Assembly (NCBI RefSeq): GCF_006345805.1
Contig: NC_043009.1
Coordinates: forward strand, 11,904,001 to 11,968,000
Direction: 5' to 3'
DNA: 64,000 nt
DNA from: Octopus sinensis
Taxonomy: Eukaryota
The position numbers and the translations under genes were made by a program. Shown here piece by piece: positions 12,021-64,000 of the stretch. Numbering within the stretch: position 1 is the first letter of the stretch; each line of letters starts with the position of its first letter. The notes below the pieces were generated by a model. That model searched no databases. It had not been told where the DNA came from and saw nothing but the letters and a program-made list of their open reading frames with translations.

Positions 12021-12685
12021 AGGCATTGTACATATATATATATATACAGATGCTTGAATTTGTGTACCTTCGAGCAGGAGTGTCTGCTTGTATGTATATA
12101 CTTTATAACAGAGAATAAACCGCCTTTGTTATAAGATGCCGAGTAAAAGAAGAAACCTTTTATATGAATATAAGAATTGTAAATCCCAAGGTGATATTCC
12201 CTTTAAAATTCTTTATAAGTAACCATTGTTGGAGAAAAGACAAACAAAATTAAAAACATGTTGAAAACCTCAAGTCATTTTAATGTATAACAAGTGTGGA
12301 AGATATTATTTGTACATCAGTTTGTCTGTTATACTGGTTACAATTTTAATAAATTAAACATTCAAATAAAAATTAACCAAATATATAAAAAAAAAACTAA
12401 TATGGAAGCATTTAAAAAAACTGCCATTATACAAAGCTTGAATGAAACAAGCGTAAATACAAATACGCTCGCATAGACAGGATTGCACATATATTTAAAA
12501 GAGCACAAAGACATACAGACACATATACAGACATGCGCAGTGGTTAGTAACCTCCTGCATAAAAAATAAGCAGAAATTCCACACATCACAGATAGCACAA
12601 ATATTTGAATGGAAAGGTTTGGAAGATCATTAAGAAGTGTGATGGTACTGTGCCGACTAGATTACTTTCTGTACATTTAGTGCGG

Positions 12686-17186: not shown

Positions 17187-18521
17187 GCAGTTGACTTCAG
17201 ATTTTGAAAGCAATTATTTCGCTTTGGAAAGATCACCTTAGACACGTAGAGAAAGAAGAAAAAAACACAGCGTGTAGATATGTTTTTTTGCAAAAATAAA
17301 CCAACATTAATAATATTGTTTACGTATGCATATCTTCGTGTTTGATGATTTGATTGATTATAACTCAAGATATGATGAACAAATGATACACATTTGGATG
17401 ATAACTGGATGCAAAAAAAAAATTAAAAAGAATTGAAATAAACCAACAGTTAATTGGTTTTAAAATTAATGGAATCAGGTCTAAAAAAAAAAATATATGA
17501 AGAGATCAATAAAATATTTTGCCACAAAAAATATTTCCAGGTAAAGAAAATGTATATAAATGAACCAAAGGTGTGATTGGAAAATCAAACAACATAAAAA
17601 AAGGCTCCAGGAGTTCGGTTTACTCCAGTAAAACTTTCGTCGACTTTCTTGGACAGAAAACGCGTTGTGAGAGAAACATCTCTTTAGGAAAACTCGCAAA
17701 ACATGTACATTATTATGATTCTTCTCGATTAAGCTAAAGACTCCAATAAAAGTTTTGCTTAAGAATACACACGTGATAAAAATTACCAAGTTAGTTATCC
17801 ACTCAGGTCTCTCTCTTTTTTTATATTTTACATAGACCTTTGATATACTGAATTTGAAAATTACAGTTTATATATAATTATGTTTGTTTCTCTTTTTCTA
17901 ATTATATTTTACCTGTAAGTTATCATAAATACTTACAGAAACAGATGTAGAAATAAACATTTGATATTAAGAAAATAAAGAAAATTTTTTAAGGTATCAG
18001 CTCACATGAGTATCGGAAGATAACTACCTATGACTGAGAGAGAGAGAGTCTTGTATATATATTTGTTATGACACCGATGTAAAATAAATATGTATGCAAA
18101 GTAATCGCATGTGGTAGAGATATGGACAAATCCAAAATCTGCTCTTTTGTCATGGAAGCTACTTATCTGTCTATCTCCAACAGAGTGTAACACTGTTGGA
18201 GCAATATATATTTATCCGATATATATCCATGTATGTGTTTGTGTGTGTAGTAAATTTCTTGTGTCATGTCTGACATGTTTCCTTCGACACAGTCGATTGC
18301 ACTACGTTATAATGATTAAAAAATCTTCATATTTGTGGAGTGATACCTGCAGCAGTTATGCTGGTAGCACTATCTACCCCGATGACTGCATCAAAGCTAT
18401 CACGCCCCACCGTTCCTCTTTCAACTTATTCGTTCTTAAAACTTTCTTTCTCTTTACCTTATCTCCGGTTTTTATATACTAACTTACTAACTTTTCTAAA
18501 ATACAAAAGAACTATACAATC

Positions 18522-18857: not shown

Positions 18858-19489
18858 TCATATATTACACACCATCAAACGAATGTTCAAAGTCAGTATG
18901 GGTAAAAAATATATTAATTTCGCAAAAGAGAAAACTCTGTTTCCTCGGGACATCGGCTGCTTTCCTGTAAATGACTTCTCGCCTCTAAACGACTGCTCGC
19001 CTCTAAACGACTGCTCGCCTCTATACGAGGGCATGTTGCTACTGTCTGGTTCATTCCGAATTTGCGGTGCTGTACGCTTGTCGTATTGACACCAGTTCCC
19101 CATATATTCACTCGAACAAGAGCATTTAAAACTTCGTTGACGTTGGTGGTATCGGCAAGTCCCACCATTCAGACAGGGTTTCTGTACACAATAGTTTTTA
19201 TATTGGCATTCGGGACCAGTTATACCAAGAGGGCAGATGCATTCTTCACGACCTTCACGAGCATATGACAAACAGGTACCGCCATTCCTGCAGCGAAGTC
19301 GCTTGCATTTATTGATGAGAATTTCACAACGTCGTCCAGTAAATCCGTTGCGACACTCACATCGGCTCAGACCTATGCATGTACCACCGTTTCTGCAAGG
19401 GCACGGTAGATAAAGTTCACAGTTCTTTCCTCCGTAATCGCTGGGACAAGAGCATGCATAATCATCGAAATATTCGACACAGGTACCTC
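18858..19489 (-). CDS. Delta: Delta-like ligand probable last coding exon: EGF6 end, EGF7-9, spacer, hydrophobic tail, stop
   Basis: AATTTTTCAG|GAGGTACC; phase 1 joins QNG|GTC. The frame is open to TGA at 18858-18860 with three further complete EGF repeats. The 3' boundary is less certain because a cryptic donor is possible. Confidence 0.85.
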
Positions 19490-19643: not shown

Positions 19644-20043
19644 TACTCTTTTACTCTTTTACTTGTTTCAGTCAGTTGACTGCGGCCATGCTGGAGCACC
19701 GCTTTTAGTCAAGGAAATCGACCCCAGGACTTGTTCTTTGTAAGCCTAGTACTTAATCTATTGGCCACTTTTGCCGAACCGCTAAGTTACGGGGACGTAA
19801 ACACACCAGCATCGGTTGTCAAGCGATGTTGGTGGTGGGGGGACAAACACAGACACACAAACGCACACACACATACACATATACACGACGGGCTTCTTTC
19901 AGTTTCCGTCTACCAAATCCACTCACAAGGCTTTGGTCGGGCCGAGGCTAAAGTAGAAGACACTTGCCCAAGGTGCCACGCAGTGGGACTGAACCTGGAA
20001 CCATGTAGTTCGTAAGCAAGCTACTTACCACACAGCCACTCCT
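19644..20043 (-). mobile_element. SINE family B (tRNA head, CORE-like GGCACCTTGGGCAAGTG block, internal SSR, (AAAAGAGT)n tail)
   Basis: Near-identical to the copies at 33140, 39568, 47904, 54327 and 61750. Confidence 0.92.
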
Positions 20044-21101
20044 ATGCCTTATTATTATTTTTTTTCCGTAATTTTGTCTTGAAAGAAATCGCCAACGATG
20101 CACACGCAGTCACATATTGAAATGACAGAAAGGGAATGAGTGAAAAAAGTTCTTTCAAAGACAGGAGAGTGCAAGAGGAGGTATGTGTGTGTGTATGTGG
20201 GTTTGTGCGGATGCGCAGGTCTGTGTGTGTGTAATGATAGCACGTATATGTGCACGCGCGTGTATGTGTGATTGTGGCTGTTTATGTATGTATGTGGTTG
20301 GACTTAACATCGTTTAAGGTCATAGGAAGAATTTATAGTAAGAATTTTGGTAGGAGTGGCTGTCTGTTGGGTGTCTACCTACACATGTGCACACGCAAAT
20401 GAACCTAAACATATCTCCCATACACACACACAGTACACACTCATACATACACGCACACGATTATACATGCATGTACACACACACACGTACTACAAGCACT
20501 CACACACACATACAGAGCAACAATACAATTACTCCACAGACACATCTTCAAGCGTACACACATACCCACACGTGCACACACACACATACATACACAAACA
20601 CACACTGCAAAAAAAAAATCAATTCCAAATTATAACCGAGACTTCATTGCACTTTTGAGATCTGCGCCCTCAGCATTAGGGACGAAGATTAGCAAATTGA
20701 AAATATAATATTTTCATTTACACATCGACCGACCATCTTGTTATATACACACAGAAACGCTCTTCCGAACATAAACTAATGCACACGTATGATTACGCAT
20801 GCGTGTACAGCTCACATAATCAATTATAATATATGCACACCCACAAGCACATTTACAAACATTTTAAAAGAGATATGCGTGCACATGTATAAAAAGGAAG
20901 TTAGACGCACACAAATTTACTCATACACACTCACACGCATACAAACACACACTTAAACTGTGAACTGAAGCTATTGAAATGAAAGCTAACTTGCTTTCAA
21001 GAACGTAATATCCAAACAATCACTAGGGTCTGAAATCTAGAAGTTTGTCCCTTCTCAATGAATAGCCAACTCGTTAGAATAAGAAATGCGCAAATACGTA
21101 C

Positions 21102-21315
21102 CATTCTGACACGGTGAAGATTGGCATTCGTTGATTTCCTTCTCGCAGAAATCACCCGTAAAACCTTTTGGGCATGCGCACCAGCCACCTACTTCTCCCA
21201 TAACACAGGTACCGTGATTCTCACAGACTATTTTGTCGCATGATTTCACGTGCTTTTCGCAGCGGTCTCCAGTGAAGCCTTCGGCACAGTGACATCTGTA
21301 GCCTGTATGTATTTC
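21102..21315 (-). CDS. Delta: Delta-like ligand exon: end of EGF4, EGF5, start of EGF6
   Basis: TTATCTTGTCAG|GAAATA...CAGAATG|GTACGT; 214 nt, phase 0 to 1. Encodes EIHTGYRCHCAEGFTGDRCE...CEKEINECQSSPCQNG. Confidence 0.93.
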
Positions 21316-23805: not shown

Positions 23806-23972
23806 GACACATTTGCCATCGTTGCTACAAGGGTTTTCTCGCGGACACCTTTTGTACTGGCAATTTGATCCTTTAAAAGATGGCGGGCAGGAACATGTAT
23901 AATTAGAAGTTGGATCAAATTTACAGCTTCCACCATTTTCACAGGGTTTATATTTGCTGCAGTAATTCTTAT
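23806..23972 (-). CDS. Delta: Delta-like ligand exon: EGF3 and first half of EGF4
   Basis: TTTCCTTTCAG|ATAAGAAT...TGTGTC|GTAAGT; 167 nt, phase 1 to 0. Encodes DKNYCSKYKPCENGGSCKFDPTSNYTCSCPPSFKGSNCQYKRCPRENPCSNDGKCV. Confidence 0.93.
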
Positions 23973-25273: not shown

Positions 25274-25404
25274 CAATGTTGCACAGGAAACCTGTCCAGC
25301 CATGCTGACAGATGCACTGCCAAGGTTCGTAACAGATACCGTGTAAACAATTTGGATCTTTCTTGCATTTGGTGCAAAACTCGCCTTCCCAACCAATTCG
25401 GCAG
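25274..25404 (-). CDS. Delta: Delta-like ligand exon: end of EGF1 plus EGF2 (CRIGWEGEFCTKCKKDPNCLHGICYEPWQCICQHGWTGFLCNI)
   Basis: TTTTGTATTACAG|CTGCCG...AACATTG|GTAAGC; 131 nt, phase 2 to 1. Matches the Delta DOS-region pattern CxxGWxGxxCxxC...CxHGxC..PWQCxCxxGWxGxxC. Confidence 0.93.
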
Positions 25405-26094
25405 CTGTAATACAAAATTATATAGACTTATAAATAATTACATAATAACTAATCGGGTAATTACGCAGGAAAATAATTTCTTACTTAAGCACAAGACAGC
25501 AATTTTATATGGATATAAAATACAACTAAGTGTTGTAGTTATGAGTTTCTAGAGGGAAGTAGTCATGTAATGAGAGTAATGTGTGGTTTCACCTGACATC
25601 CAGGACAGATTTACAGATTCATAATGCGTGAGAAAATACTGCTTGCTCTACTGCCATAAATTCGTAATATAGATAATAGTTTGTAACTTCGAAGTGCATA
25701 TTGCACACACACGCACCATAGCACACAGCACACAGCACACATGCATACACACAAACAGAGGCTAAAATGCACTGCATCTTAAGTAAGCTGATTCGTACTG
25801 TGTCGATTATGCTGAACTAAAAATCATAATATCTTAGTATTTCGAGATATTAAAAGCAAACAGAAGTTTTATTCAACCGTCATCTCGAAAATATATTCCA
25901 CCTGATCGATTGCAACATATGACCATTTTTAACTTATTGAAACATAATTTGAAGAAATCCTATATATGTATGAATGTATGCATATATATATATATATGCA
26001 TACACACACACACATATATATATATATGTGTGTGTGTGTATATATGTGTGTGTGTGCATGTATGTATGTATGTGTATATATTTTTTTCAAAATG

Positions 26095-26427
<333 letters not shown>

Positions 26428-26829
26428 CTTTGATTTTATGTTCAGTTATAATAAAAACAATTTTACATTAATCTGATAGGTTCCACTATACTTTTATAGA
26501 GCAAAAATTTATCATTCTTATACAACAGACTGCCCGAGGTTGGCTTAGCAGACTGGAACTCCGAAGTCAATGTCAACAATATCCTTGTAGAAGAAAAATG
26601 AAGATACGAAGTATGTATTGTGTGTGCGTGTGTGGCAGTAGTTTGGGGTAGGTTATATATTTCTGTGATAGTTTTGTGATAGTGGCTCAATGGAGCCTGT
26701 ATTTTTGAAATGCGAGACACACGAAACTCAAATGACAAAGGTTAATATTAAAACTGAAAATAAAGATGAGACTAATATTGACGATAAGGTGGCATGCACA
26801 GCGATGTTGAGGAGAAATTCAATCCTTAC

Positions 26830-26890
26830 CTGCACTCATTCGGTTTCTTGCAAGATCCGTATGAATTATGGCATTGCTCTGGACAAATCG
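26830..26890 (-). CDS. Delta: Delta-like ligand EGF1 (DOS) exon, copy A (identical duplicate)
   Basis: Same 61 nt and same splice sites as 27934-27994, offset 1104 bp. Only one copy can be used in a full-length reading frame. Confidence 0.85.
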
Positions 26891-27024
26891 CTGGAATAGC
26901 AAACAGATGAAGAACTTAGATCCACATTTCTTGTAAACAAGATTTAATATTTGTTTATTTTAAAACACTAGACTAGACTAGACACACACAAACACACATA
27001 CATACACACACATACATATATATG

Positions 27025-27056
<32 letters not shown>

Positions 27057-27411
27057 TTATATATATATATATATGCATATATATACATATACATATGCAC
27101 ACACACACCACACATATATATATATATACTGTGTGTGTGTGTATATATGTGTGTGTGTGCATGTATGTATGTATGTGTATATATTTTTTTCAAAATGTGA
27201 CCTCGTGTGTACCGTTGGCGATTTTTTTTCCTCTGTCTTCCCTTCTCTGGATCTTTCCTTCTCCTATGTTTCCGACGAAGAGCTCCGCTCGAAACGTTAA
27301 ACCCTCCTTCTTTCCTGAGCGTCCAATAATACTATATTTGTTCCACGTCCTCGCGTTGTTGTGTTTTTTTGTGTTTTCTTGTTTGGATTAACTATTTATA
27401 TATATATATAG

Positions 27412-27450
<39 letters not shown>

Positions 27451-27933
27451 ATATATATATATGCGTATATATATATATATATAGATATATATATATATGT
27501 ATATATATATATATTATATATATATATATATATCTTGATTTTATGTTCAGTTATAATAAAAACAATTTTACATTAATCTGATAGGTTCCACTATACTTTT
27601 ATAGAGCAAAAATTTATCATTCTTATACAACAGACTGCCCGAGGTTGGCTTAGCAGACTGGAACTCCGAAGTCAATGTCAACAATATCCTTGTAGAAGAA
27701 AAATGAAGATACGAAGTATGTATTGTGTGTGCGTGTGTGGCAGTAGTTTGGGGTAGGTTATATATTTCTGTGATAGTTTTGTGATAGTGGCTCAATGGAG
27801 CCTGTATTTTTGAAATGCGAGACACACGAAACTCAAATGACAAAGTTAATATTAAAACTGAAAATAAAGATGAGACTAATATTGACGATAAGGTGGCATG
27901 CACAGCGATGTTGAGGAGAAATTCAATCCTTAC

Positions 27934-27994
27934 CTGCACTCATTCGGTTTCTTGCAAGATCCGTATGAATTATGGCATTGCTCTGGACAAATCG
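27934..27994 (-). CDS. Delta: Delta-like ligand EGF1 (DOS) exon, copy B (AICPEQCHNSYGSCKKPNECS)
   Basis: GCTATTCCAG|CGATTTGT...GAGTGCAG|GTAAGG; 61 nt, phase 1 to 2. This is exactly the exon needed between the DSL exon and 25404. Identical to copy A. Confidence 0.85.
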
Positions 27995-28138
27995 CTGGAA
28001 TAGCAAACAGATGAAGAACTTAGATCCACATTTCTTGTAAACAAGATTTAATATTTGTTTATTTTAAAACACTAGACTAGACTAGACACACACAAACACA
28101 CATACATACACACACATACATATATATGTATATATATA

Positions 28139-28181
<43 letters not shown>

Positions 28182-28326
28182 ATATATATATGCATATATA
28201 TACATATACATATGCACACACACACACACACATATATATATGTACATATATATTCAGAATGTAACCACATGTGAATCGTTGGCGATTTGTTTTCCTATGC
28301 CTTCCTTTTCTATTCGGCTTTCCTCC

Positions 28327-29059: not shown

Positions 29060-29721
29060 ACACACACACATAAGTAAATATTCTTTGGAACCTTGATTTT
29101 TAGGCACGTTTTCCAATCCTTTAAGGATAAACGGCCCATGGGCGATCTAATGGACGGGCAGATTTTCGAAAAAACCCGGTATATGTATATGTATGCCTAT
29201 ACGTGTATGTGTGTACGTTTGCACACACACACACACACACACACGTATACAAGTGAAAAAAAACTCTCCCAAATAAGGGGTGTTTATGAGTAGGCAGTGA
29301 TTAGTCATATTGGCATCGGGAATATACGTTTATCCTTCTTCTTTTCACCAATGTTTGGAAGGTGTTTTTGAAACAATTTCATTACTTACTGCGTCCTCTG
29401 TCTGTGTTAGAGACGTATACATCCGCAATTTGGAATGAACTTGCTGCACACTTCTATGTGAGGCTGCATGGAGTGTGTGTGTGTGTGTGTGTGTGGTGTG
29501 TGTGTTTTGCTATTGCCAAGTATATGATATATTGCCAGTGACCATATGAGAACCTTTGACTACTTGACAAATAGGCCGGCATTGTATCTACTTACCTATT
29601 TCTTATGTATATATCTATGTCTGTAAAACTGTGCCCAAACATTAAATTCGCTAACTTCAAGAATGCTTCTGTTCTTCTTTGTTTGCATGCAAAACAAATT
29701 TATAAGTAAACAAATGCTCAC

Positions 29722-29976
29722 CTTGATCACAATAGTTTCCTTTCCAGCCTTCCATACATTTTCGGGTGCCGTTTTCTGTGCAATAGTAATGACCCAGTTC
29801 ATCGTCTCTAACTCGACAAAAGTGGTCGCATTTTTTGCCATAATAGTTTTTATTACAAACGACACGGTACTCGAAACTCATCATCGTGATATTGGAGCGC
29901 ATCACTTTTTTCACCCATCTATGAGACGGTTGCACGATGCTGGTATGGACAACTCGTTGAATCATGTAGCGAGGAT
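29722..29976 (-). CDS. Delta: Delta-like Notch ligand, DSL-domain exon
   Basis: TGTAG|ATCCTCGC...GATCAAG|GTGAGC; 255 nt, phase 1 to 1. Encodes CNKNYYGKKCDHFCRVRDDELGHYYCTENGTRKCMEGWKGNYC, the canonical 6-Cys DSL pattern. Confidence 0.95.
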
Positions 29977-30029
29977 CTACAATACACATGACATAACTTG
30001 ATCAAATATAATCCTAGCAAACCATCAAA

Positions 30030-31933: not shown

Positions 31934-31994
31934 CTCGAAATGTATCGTTCCTGAGATTGTCGTGCCAGGCTTCAACAGACAACGTGAACGATTG
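31934..31994 (-). CDS. Delta: Delta-like Notch ligand, internal exon: end of N-terminal C2/MNNL domain (QSFTLSVEAWHDNLRNDTFR)
   Basis: Minus strand TTCTATTCTTCAG|CAATCG...TTTCGAG|GTGAGT; 61 nt, phase 0 to 1. The peptide matches the DSL-ligand motif (G/R)TFSLIIEAW and splices in frame to the DSL exon (G|AT = Asp). Confidence 0.88.

Positions 31995-63935: not shown

Positions 63936-64000
<65 letters not shown>

What the first reader, a model, noticed from the sequence alone, without database searches (positions are those of the whole stretch)
18858..19085. Delta-class ligand apparently lacking an intracellular domain: candidate GPI-anchored or decoy Notch ligand
Seen: after EGF9 the frame reads ~50 polar residues, then VFSFAKLIYFLPILTLNIRLMVCNI and stop. 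My hand-calculated Kyte-Doolittle mean for the last 19 residues is about 1.75. There is no basic stop-transfer cluster and no cytoplasmic tail, and I found no downstream TM/ICD exon in 1-18.8 kb. Established: Delta/Serrate signalling needs ICD lysines ubiquitinated by Mind bomb/Neuralized for endocytic pulling, and ICD-less ligands act as inhibitors. Inference: a C-terminal hydrophobic tail preceded by small residues (SRGN) fits a GPI-addition signal, making this a possible non-endocytosed cis-inhibitor or decoy paralogue.
Basis: partly seen in the sequence, partly recalled or inferred. Interest (0 to 1): 0.7.

Follow-up and report, generated by a model that had tools for sequence, protein, structure and literature searches.

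The report
Octopus tail-less Delta2 Notch ligand
The window holds the last coding exon of an octopus Delta-type Notch ligand that really ends in a short greasy tail with no intracellular domain, but this gene and its mollusc-wide "Delta2" family were published in 2021, so only the idea that the tail is a GPI-anchor signal is new, and it is untested.

Summary
On the minus strand, the last exon (19489-18858) encodes EGF6-9, a 51-residue polar stalk and the tail VFSFAKLIYFLPILTLNIRLMVCNI followed by a stop. The stop is real:
- Four octopod lineages share the same stop position.
- The tail has dN/dS about 0.12, the same as the EGF repeats.
- Neither candidate splice donor is conserved as a donor.
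- No ICD-like exon exists anywhere in the window.
- In the canonical paralogue Delta1, the TM and about 95 ICD residues lie in the homologous exon with no intron between them.

The protein is identical to RefSeq XP_029644317.1. That entry is the octopus member of the mollusc-specific "Delta2" clade with "early termination" described in Sci Rep 2021;11:11378 (PMC8166818). The ICD-less ligand is therefore already known.

That paper never mentions GPI. Here, 14 Delta2 tails (13 species) are only marginally hydrophobic: median +3.5 kcal/mol on a translocon scale, against -2.3 for 74 canonical Delta TMs. They sit at the extreme C-terminus, and in octopods they follow a conserved S-R-G that fits the ω/ω+2 rule. 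GPI anchoring is plausible (about 0.5) but unproven. An inhibitory or decoy role is inference only.

The parts
18858..19489 (-). Terminal coding exon of octopus Delta2: EGF6 (second part) to EGF9, stalk, hydrophobic tail and stop codon
   Evidence: Acceptor tttttcag|GA and in-frame junction with the previous exon. tblastn with O. bimaculoides XP_014771450 gives 85% identity over 211 residues to the stop. Identical to XP_029644317.1.
18858..18860 (-). Stop codon TGA, at the same position in four octopod lineages
   Evidence: Four-way alignment; proteins.
18861..18935 (-). C-terminal hydrophobic tail VFSFAKLIYFLPILTLNIRLMVCNI. It is a candidate GPI-attachment signal and appears to be the degenerate remnant of the Delta1 TM helix.
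   Evidence: Best 19-mer scores +4.1 kcal/mol, against a median of -2.3 for 74 canonical Delta TMs. dN/dS is 0.12 against Argonauta. Synonymous changes run through the last four codons.
18936..18950 (-). SRGNR: S-R-G is invariant in all four octopods, 29 residues from the C-terminus. It is the candidate ω / ω+1 / ω+2 site.
   Evidence: pattern definition from PMC10491789.
18951..19088 (-). Polar stalk between EGF9 and S-R-G, including four 18-nt tandem repeats (SYRGEQ/SFRGEQ/SFRGEK/SFTGKQ). Its length varies between octopods.
   Evidence: Argonauta lacks 18 of these residues.
21102..21315 (-). Exon encoding EGF4 (second part), EGF5 and EGF6 (first part)
   Evidence: Splice sites; tblastn.
23806..23972 (-). 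Exon encoding EGF3 and EGF4 (first part)
25274..25404 (-). Exon encoding EGF1 (end) and EGF2
26832..26891 (-). Exon encoding AICPEQCHNSYGSCKKPNEC (DSL/EGF1 junction), copy 1 of a tandem duplication
27936..27995 (-). The same exon, copy 2 of the tandem duplication. Only one copy can be spliced in, because the 61-nt exon would shift the frame if used twice.
29720..29977 (-). Exon encoding the end of MNNL and the DSL domain
   Evidence: tblastn 98.8% identity over 86 residues; Pfam DSL at residues 179-224.
31935..31994 (-). Exon encoding QSFTLSVEAWHDNLRNDTFR (MNNL)
   Evidence: The signal-peptide and first MNNL exons lie beyond position 64000: synteny with O. bimaculoides puts them about 9-10 kb past the window end.
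17361..17405 (-). Mini-exon VIIQMCIICSSYLEL* used by the GenBank O. vulgaris model CAI9731602 (P0002) instead of the conserved exon end. Probably an annotation artefact or a genus-specific minor isoform.
   Evidence: Its donor at 19218 lies inside EGF8 and reads GC in Argonauta, where the mini-exon is not found.

Best explanation
The region 18858-19085 is the true 3' end of the coding sequence of the octopus orthologue of mollusc-specific Delta2. Delta2 is an old paralogue of canonical Delta (Delta1).

Shown:
- The protein keeps a full Notch-binding ectodomain: signal peptide (encoded outside the window), MNNL, DSL and nine EGF repeats.
- It ends in-exon a few residues after a weakly hydrophobic segment.
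- It has no cytoplasmic Lys, no NxxN/Mib1-binding motifs and no ATEV PDZ ligand.
- This architecture is shared by Delta2 from 13 species of cephalopods, gastropods and bivalves, which form one clade.
- In octopods the tail is under purifying selection.

Inferred, probability about 0.5: the last 29 residues are a GPI-attachment signal, with ω = Ser of S-R-G, an 8-residue spacer NRVFSFAK and a 19-residue hydrophobic end. The mature ligand would then sit on the outer leaflet.

Inferred, probability about 0.5 whichever anchor is used: because it cannot be ubiquitinated by Mind bomb or Neuralized, nor enter Epsin-dependent endocytosis, it cannot pull on Notch efficiently. It would then act mainly as a cis-inhibitor or as a competitor of Delta1 and Jagged, tuning Notch signalling rather than activating it.
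For: Identity:
- The window gene model equals XP_029644317.1, listed as an O. vulgaris Delta in PMC8166818 Supplementary Data 1.
- That paper describes Delta2 and its early termination.
- In my neighbour-joining tree, 13 short-tailed proteins form one clade with 100% bootstrap (200 replicates), separate from ICD-bearing Deltas.

Terminus:
- The stop is the same in four octopods.
- dN/dS for the tail is 0.12, against 0.11 for the EGF repeats.
- The codon GTG at the proposed donor is GTT in L004, and the preceding ATG is ACT in Argonauta, which is a coding pattern of change.
- The CGT-ACA site is not donor-like in L004 or Argonauta.
- The only island downstream that is conserved with Argonauta is non-coding.
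- The window has no ICD homology.
- In Argonauta Delta1, the homologous exon encodes residues 425-712, which include the TM (591-616) and 96 ICD residues with no intron. A hidden ICD exon directly after the tail is therefore not the ancestral layout.
- Oyster Delta2 is represented by 181 sequences, mostly from 2.1-2.8 kb contigs. These are too short to hold the gene with its introns, so they are spliced transcripts, and they end the same way.

GPI:
- The best 19-mer of 14 Delta2 tails (13 species) scores +0.5 to +6.4 kcal/mol (median +3.5), against -5.2 to +1.8 (median -2.3) for 74 canonical Delta TMs.
- Only 0-8 residues follow the hydrophobic stretch.
- S-R-G is invariant in octopods, while the stalk before it has indels.
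- The layout fits the published pattern: small ω, small ω+2, an 8-12 residue spacer and 15-20 hydrophobic residues (PMC10491789).

Function:
- Ubiquitination of ICD lysines drives Epsin-dependent endocytosis, and one role of ubiquitination is to release the ligand from cis-inhibition (PMC5675594 abstract).
- Delta1 and Delta2 show complementary expression in four molluscs (PMC8166818).
Against: - No GPI predictor and no experiment was available.
- The ω rule is permissive, and every tail had several candidate sites, so it discriminates poorly.
- The octopus tail contains Lys, Asn and Arg. Its sequence is conserved as strongly as the EGF repeats, which is more than a generic GPI signal needs.
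- The hydrophobicity scale values were entered from memory of Hessa et al. 2005 and were summed without position weighting.
- The Mercenaria tail has eight residues, including K and R, after the hydrophobic core, which looks more like a short-tailed TM protein.
- Lysine-free Drosophila Delta keeps some signalling activity (PMC5675594), and nematodes use secreted DSL ligands (own knowledge). Absence of an ICD therefore does not prove an inhibitory role.
- Octopus has Leu where Jagged-1 has the Notch-contacting Phe207.
- No octopus transcript was examined here.
Confidence: 0.55

Rival explanations
1. The tail is a single-pass membrane anchor, the shortened Delta1 TM helix, with a cytoplasmic stub of 0-7 residues. 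Delta2 would be a tail-less type I membrane protein rather than a GPI protein. Functionally it would still be a ligand that cannot be ubiquitinated.
For: PMC8166818 aligns the Delta2 end with the Delta1 TM plus the following Arg. Motif echoes exist: Delta1 GLPLIVII against Delta2 FLPILTLNI, and Gigantopelta LLLCLGVLAI against Delta1 CLGVGIP. Some tails are fairly hydrophobic, with Mactra at +0.5, P0025 at +0.7 and Lottia at -0.2 kcal/mol. Mercenaria has KRSLLFEY after the core. Strong sequence conservation of the octopod tail suits a helix with specific contacts.
Against: The median best 19-mer is +3.5 kcal/mol, with octopus at +4.1. Both lie outside the range of 74 canonical Delta TMs, whose maximum is +1.8. 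In octopus only 12 uncharged residues lie between Lys and Arg. Argonauta replaces the supposed stop-transfer Arg with Cys.
Confidence: 0.3
2. The apparent stop is an annotation artefact. The real mRNA splices from a donor near the end of this exon to TM/ICD exons further downstream, possibly beyond the window.
For: GT dinucleotides exist at 18872 (ATG|GTGTGT) and about 19074. A GenBank model of the same gene (P0002) does splice out of this exon to a downstream mini-exon. No octopus transcript was examined.
Against: Stop position and tail are conserved in four octopod lineages, with a coding-type substitution pattern through the last codons. The donor +3 position is T in L004, and the -2/-1 positions change in Argonauta. 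The second site is not donor-like in two lineages. The P0002 donor reads GC in Argonauta, its mini-exon is absent there, and it would cut EGF8 in half. No ICD homology was found. All 13 Delta2 species end the same way, including transcript-derived oyster sequences.
Confidence: 0.03
3. Delta2 is a decaying duplicate, a truncated pseudogene-like copy with no function of its own. The tail would then be meaningless read-through.
For: PMC8166818 reports generally lower expression of Delta2 than Delta1, very low in the scallop, and loss of the gene in several gastropods.
Against: dN/dS is 0.07-0.12 for EGF repeats and tail between lineages separated by saturated dS. All cysteines and the MNNL and DSL domains are intact. 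The gene is retained in three mollusc classes as one 100%-supported clade. Expression is stage-specific.
Confidence: 0.03
4. Delta2 is an activating ligand that works without its own endocytosis. It might do so by clustering in rafts, by being shed as a soluble form, or by relying on forces from the receiving cell.
For: Lysine-free Drosophila Delta retains ubiquitin-independent signalling (PMC5675594). From my own knowledge, C. elegans uses secreted DSL ligands, and plate-immobilised ligand ectodomains activate Notch. The DSL contact residues are largely kept.
Against: In flies and vertebrates, ICD-deleted Delta behaves as a dominant negative (own knowledge: Xenopus X-Delta-1 STU, Drosophila Delta lacking the ICD). 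The residual fly activity still used an ICD that binds Neuralized.
Confidence: 0.25

Closest known systems
Mollusc-specific Delta2 (Sci Rep 2021;11:11378, PMC8166818)
   Same: This is the same gene. XP_029644317.1 in that paper's Supplementary Data 1 is identical to the window's protein, including the tail. The clade, the early termination near the post-TM Arg and the Delta1/Delta2 duplication were all described there.
   Different: The paper speaks of 'loss of the TM domain' and proposes separate frameshift or nonsense events in each lineage. It never considers GPI anchoring (0 mentions). My data show one monophyletic short-tailed clade and a retained, weakly hydrophobic C-terminal segment in every member. 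That is more simply explained by a single ancestral truncation.
Canonical Delta / DLL1 (octopus Delta1: XP_014769856, XP_029638366; Argonauta P0249)
   Same: Both have MNNL, DSL and EGF repeats with the same intron positions, and the last large exon starts in the same EGF repeat. Similarity to the DLL1 structure is strong.
   Different: Delta1 has a strongly hydrophobic TM (-2.4 to -3.7 kcal/mol), the stop-transfer sequence RHQRHH, and an ICD of about 140 residues with EQN..N..K motifs and a C-terminal ATEV/VSEV. Delta2 has none of these.
Vertebrate DLL3
   Same: It is a divergent Delta paralogue thought to act as a cis-inhibitor rather than a trans-activator (own knowledge).
   Different: DLL3 keeps a TM and an ICD and has a degenerate DSL domain. 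Octopus Delta2 keeps a good DSL domain (64.5 bits) and loses the ICD. The two arose independently.
Engineered ICD-deleted Delta (Xenopus X-Delta-1 STU; Drosophila Delta lacking the ICD) and lysine-free Delta (PMC5675594)
   Same: These have an intact ectodomain and no ubiquitin-acceptor ICD. They give the functional expectation of dominant-negative activity or enhanced cis-inhibition (and own knowledge).
   Different: They are artificial and keep the native TM helix. Delta2 is a natural gene retained in three mollusc classes (cephalopods, gastropods and bivalves) with a degenerate anchor.
Secreted DSL ligands of C. elegans, and the GPI-linked non-canonical Notch ligands contactin/F3 and NB-3
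   Same: They are natural Notch-binding proteins that lack a TM and ICD or carry a GPI anchor (own knowledge).
   Different: The nematode proteins lack any C-terminal hydrophobic segment and the MNNL domain. The contactins are Ig/FNIII proteins, not DSL ligands. The paper library held no report of a natural GPI-anchored DSL ligand.

Membership tests
DSL (Delta/Serrate/LAG-2) Notch ligands, Delta class | N-terminal MNNL (C2-like) domain | tested here: met
   PF07657, 137.7 bits, profile positions 2-157 of 157. Part of it is encoded in window exons 31994-31935 and 29977-29720. The first part lies outside the window.
DSL (Delta/Serrate/LAG-2) Notch ligands, Delta class | DSL domain with the conserved Notch-contact face | tested here: met
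   PF01414, 64.5 bits, full length. Aligned to Jagged-1 and DLL1 structures. The Jagged-1 positions F199, R201, R203 and D205 are kept; F207 is Leu in Octopus and Phe in Argonauta.
DSL (Delta/Serrate/LAG-2) Notch ligands, Delta class | Tandem EGF repeats and no Jagged-type cysteine-rich/VWC region | tested here: met
   Nine EGF repeats by cysteine pattern. Pfam finds EGF, hEGF and EGF_DL_JAG and no VWC.
DSL (Delta/Serrate/LAG-2) Notch ligands, Delta class | Single strongly hydrophobic TM helix followed by basic stop-transfer residues | tested here: not met
   The best 19-mer is +4.1 kcal/mol, against -5.2 to +1.8 for 74 canonical Deltas. There is one Arg and no basic cluster.
DSL (Delta/Serrate/LAG-2) Notch ligands, Delta class | Intracellular domain with Lys acceptors, Mib1/Neuralized-binding motifs and often a PDZ ligand | tested here: not met
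   The stop comes 0-7 residues after the hydrophobic stretch. No ICD homology was found in the window.
Mollusc-specific Delta2 clade (PMC8166818) | Groups with bivalve, gastropod and cephalopod Delta2, apart from Delta1 | tested here: met
   Neighbour-joining tree on 597 columns and 31 sequences: 13 short-tailed proteins are monophyletic at 100% of 200 bootstraps. The best non-octopod hits are bivalve short-tailed Deltas.
Mollusc-specific Delta2 clade (PMC8166818) | Early termination within about 10 residues of the TM-equivalent segment | tested here: met
Mollusc-specific Delta2 clade (PMC8166818) | Sequence identity with the published octopus member | tested here: met
   XP_029644317.1 in Supplementary Data 1 matches every window-encoded residue, including ...SRGNRVFSFAKLIYFLPILTLNIRLMVCNI.
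GPI-anchored proteins | N-terminal ER signal peptide | tested here: inconclusive
   MSHQLHRIICLTLVVLLLSSEVSG precedes the MNNL domain in P0002 and XP_029644317. This was judged by eye only, and the exon is outside the window.
GPI-anchored proteins | C-terminal signal: small ω, small ω+2, spacer of about 8-12 residues, 15-20 hydrophobic residues ending the protein (PMC10491789) | tested here: met
   S-R-G, then NRVFSFAK (8 residues), then LIYFLPILTLNIRLMVCNI (19 residues). The rule is permissive, so this is weak evidence.
GPI-anchored proteins | Marginal rather than TM-grade hydrophobicity of the C-terminal segment (Galian et al. 2012, cited in PMC10491789) | tested here: met
   Delta2 tails have a median of +3.5 kcal/mol, against -2.3 for Delta TMs. 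Scale values were entered from memory.
GPI-anchored proteins | Score from a trained predictor (NetGPI, PredGPI, big-PI) | not testable with these tools
   No such predictor is installed.
GPI-anchored proteins | Release by PI-PLC, dependence on GPI transamidase, and removal of the C-terminal peptide | not testable with these tools
   This needs an experiment.

The most novel reading that the evidence does not exclude
Mollusc Delta2 is a natural GPI-anchored DSL ligand. After the Delta duplication in an early mollusc, the TM helix of one copy was truncated and degenerated into a GPI-attachment signal. The result is an outer-leaflet Notch ligand that cannot be endocytosed, kept in cephalopods, gastropods and bivalves as a built-in cis-inhibitor or competitor of Delta1 and Jagged. 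The paper library held no report of a natural GPI-anchored Delta or DSL ligand.
Probability: 0.45. Interest if true: 0.55.

Novelty: already known. Interest (0 to 1): 0.27.

Why it matters
Current models hold that DSL ligands must be ubiquitinated on their intracellular domain and endocytosed to pull Notch open. A natural ligand without any intracellular domain, kept under purifying selection in three mollusc classes, tests that rule. Either it is a genetically encoded antagonist, or Notch can be activated without ligand endocytosis.

The gene and its truncation are already published. The added value here is narrower:
- The stop is shown to be real in octopods, by conservation, substitution pattern and exon structure.
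- The competing GenBank model of this gene is shown to be doubtful.
- All Delta2 tails share weak hydrophobicity and a position at the extreme C-terminus, which gives a testable GPI-anchor hypothesis that the literature does not mention.

Tried and rejected
- **Hidden ICD exon.** I searched all six frames with 90 Delta/EGF-protein tails, including octopus Delta1 TM+ICD, and with the conserved ATEV*/VYVI.EH motifs. Nothing was found.
- **Downstream conservation with Argonauta.** The only island (12270-12368) has stops in all frames, no stable fold (z = 0.14) and no Rfam match. The nearby Rfam hits are sub-threshold microsatellite artefacts. It is not a coding exon.
- **Comparison with O. bimaculoides.** It is too close to be informative, with 86-94% identity throughout the flank.
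- **Stop created by read-through of an ancestral intron.** Rejected. In Argonauta Delta1 the homologous exon runs through the TM and 96 ICD residues without an intron.
- **The GenBank O. vulgaris model (P0002) as the true 3' end.** Rejected as the main form.
- **Profile search of 1.84 billion representatives, to ask whether short-tailed Deltas exist outside molluscs.** The top 150 were swamped by giant EGF-repeat proteins and gave no answer. The named-protein profile search showed only molluscs among the short-tailed hits.
- **ω-site rule.** Every tail has several candidate sites, so it does not discriminate.
- **First Biopython bootstrap run.** It timed out and was replaced by a numpy version.

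Full report
**What is in the window.**

The window is octopus genomic DNA: AT-rich, full of microsatellites, with large introns. A Delta-type gene lies on the minus strand. I located its exons by cysteine-pattern scanning and tblastn. In window coordinates, on the minus strand, they are:
- 31994-31935
- 29977-29720
- a 61-nt exon present twice (27995-27936 and 26891-26832)
- 25404-25274
- 23972-23806
- 21315-21102
- the terminal exon 19489-18858

The exons for the signal peptide and the first part of MNNL are not in the window. Synteny with O. bimaculoides places them about 9-10 kb beyond position 64000.

After EGF9 the frame reads 51 polar residues, then VFSFAKLIYFLPILTLNIRLMVCNI, then TGA at 18860-18858. 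No Lys and only one Arg follow the hydrophobic core.

**Is the stop real?**

Five lines of evidence say yes.
1. The same tail and stop position occur in O. bimaculoides (both the old and the current RefSeq models), in a third octopod known from three Logan genomic contigs, and in Argonauta hians.
2. Between the window and Argonauta, the 30 codons from S-R-G to the stop have dN/dS = 0.12. The EGF repeats give 0.11 and the stalk 0.12, with dS above 1. Synonymous changes continue through the last four codons.
3. ATG|GTGTGT becomes ATG|GTTTGT in L004 and ACT|GTGTGC in Argonauta. AAGC|GTACAG becomes GTTTAG and GTTCAT.
4. No ICD-like sequence exists in any frame of the window. The only block downstream that is conserved with Argonauta is non-coding.
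5. In Argonauta Delta1, which has matching intron positions, the homologous last large exon encodes residues 425-712. That span includes the TM (591-616) and 96 ICD residues with no intron, followed by one small exon for the last 44 residues. The ancestral layout therefore gives no reason to expect an intron just after the tail. The truncation is an in-exon stop.

**A competing annotation.**

The GenBank O. vulgaris model CAI9731602 (P0002, 517 aa) leaves the terminal exon at 19218, inside EGF8. It joins a mini-exon at 17405-17361 that has a good acceptor. The donor is weak. In Argonauta it reads GC and the mini-exon cannot be found. The region it skips is under purifying selection. I treat it as an artefact or, at most, a minor isoform specific to the genus Octopus.

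**What the protein is.**

Pfam finds full-length MNNL (137.7 bits), DSL (64.5 bits) and EGF repeats, and no VWC domain. The Notch-binding part aligns with the structures of DLL1 (E = 5.8e-95), Jagged-1 and DLL4.

The closest relatives outside octopods are bivalve Delta-like proteins. All of them end in a 40-76 residue stalk plus a C-terminal hydrophobic stretch followed by 0-8 residues. A profile search added scallop, oyster, abalone, Gigantopelta, Patella, Lottia and Babylonia members with the same ending. In a neighbour-joining tree, the 13 short-tailed proteins form one clade with 100% bootstrap, apart from all ICD-bearing Deltas. Oyster members are represented by 181 sequences, mostly from 2.1-2.8 kb contigs. 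Contigs that short must be spliced transcripts.

**It is already published.**

PMC8166818 (Sci Rep 2021;11:11378) names this mollusc-specific clade Delta2. It reports 'early termination' about 1-10 residues after the Arg that follows the Delta1 TM. It also reports complementary Delta1/Delta2 expression in two bivalves, a scallop and an abalone. Its Supplementary Data 1 contains XP_029644317.1, whose sequence is identical to the window's gene model through the tail, and XP_014771450.1, which is P0001.

The paper does not mention GPI. Searches for GPI-anchored Delta, DSL or Notch ligands found nothing relevant.

The paper attributes the truncation to separate mutations in each lineage and speaks of loss of the TM domain. 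The monophyly of the short-tailed clade and the retained hydrophobic end in every member fit a single early truncation better.

**GPI signal or TM helix?**

I summed a translocon hydrophobicity scale over the best 19-residue window. The values come from my memory of Hessa et al. 2005 and carry no position weighting.
- 74 canonical Delta TMs score -5.2 to +1.8 kcal/mol, median -2.3. Octopus Delta1 scores -2.4.
- 14 Delta2 tails (13 species) score +0.5 to +6.4 kcal/mol, median +3.5. The window's tail scores +4.1.
- The gastropod and extra bivalve Delta2 members added afterwards score -0.2 to +5.7, with only Lottia (-0.2) below zero.

The published signal pattern is a small ω residue, any ω+1 except Pro, a small ω+2, an 8-12 residue spacer and 15-20 hydrophobic residues, preceded by about 10 polar residues (PMC10491789). 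S-R-G / NRVFSFAK / LIYFLPILTLNIRLMVCNI meets it, and so does the polar stretch EKSFTGKQPM before it. S-R-G is invariant in four octopods, while the stalk before it gains and loses repeats. Argonauta replaces the only Arg in the tail with Cys.

Three points count against GPI:
- The ω rule is permissive.
- The octopod tail is conserved as strongly as the EGF repeats.
- A few members (Lottia, Mactra, Mercenaria) look more TM-like.

I put GPI at about 0.5, a tail-less TM anchor at about 0.3, and other fates at about 0.2.

**Likely function.**

Whichever anchor is used, no cytoplasmic Lys is present. Also absent are the conserved EQN..N..K motif region seen in lophotrochozoan Delta1 ICDs and the ATEV-type C-terminus. 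Ubiquitination of ICD lysines by Mind bomb or Neuralized sends ligands into Epsin-dependent endocytosis and also relieves cis-inhibition (PMC5675594). The most likely role is therefore a Notch-binding cis-inhibitor or competitor. This is inference.

Lysine-free fly Delta keeps some activity, and secreted nematode DSL ligands do signal (own knowledge). An activating role therefore remains possible, at about 0.25.

**Verdict.**

The 'no ICD' reading is right, but it is already known for this very gene. The GPI idea is reasonable, new relative to the literature searched, and untested.

Noticed in passing
window 25961-27100 and 27060-28217: A tandem duplication of about 1.15 kb (96.6% identity, 24 gap positions) that is single-copy in O. 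bimaculoides. Each copy carries the 61-nt exon AICPEQCHNSYGSCKKPNEC with intact ag/gt sites. Using both copies would shift the frame, so only one can be spliced in. It could be a real recent duplication or a false duplication made from two haplotypes.
   Followed up: partly
window 12270-12368 (minus strand), about 6.5 kb downstream of the stop: A conserved non-coding island: 99/99 identical to O. bimaculoides, where the flanks are about 90%, and 84% identical to Argonauta, where nothing else downstream aligns. It has stops in all frames, no stable fold (z = 0.14) and no Rfam match. It could be a distal 3'UTR element or an enhancer.
   Followed up: partly
window about 18959-19030 (minus strand): The stalk contains four tandem 18-nt repeats encoding SYRGEQ/SFRGEQ/SFRGEK/SFTGKQ. 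Copy number and sequence differ in O. bimaculoides and the third octopod. Argonauta lacks 18 of these residues, so the stalk behaves as a variable-length spacer.
   Followed up: partly
window 29720-29977 (DSL exon), motif RVRDDELGHY: Octopus Delta2 has Leu at the position of Jagged-1 Phe207, a Notch-contact residue of the DSL face. Argonauta and the bivalve Delta2 sequences read (Tegillarca, Mercenaria, Crassostrea) keep Phe. This could weaken Notch binding in the genus Octopus.
   Followed up: no
window 17361-17405 and internal donor at 19218: The GenBank O. vulgaris protein CAI9731602 ends in a mini-exon (VIIQMCIICSSYLEL*) reached from a weak donor inside EGF8. The mini-exon has a good acceptor and is 94% conserved in O. 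bimaculoides. Both the donor and the exon are absent in Argonauta.
   Followed up: yes
window about 19650-20046 (last intron): A SINE-like repeat, containing a tRNA-like GGTTC.A..C box, that also matches an unrelated position in the O. bimaculoides locus (L002 65525-65925).
   Followed up: no
P0002 versus window and XP_029644317.1: The GenBank O. vulgaris protein differs from the window at AICPDQC/AICPEQC. It differs from the RefSeq protein at VCSEKC/VCSQKC. The RefSeq protein matches the window exactly. The window therefore probably comes from the RefSeq assembly first labelled O. vulgaris rather than from the later O. vulgaris chromosome assembly.
   Followed up: no
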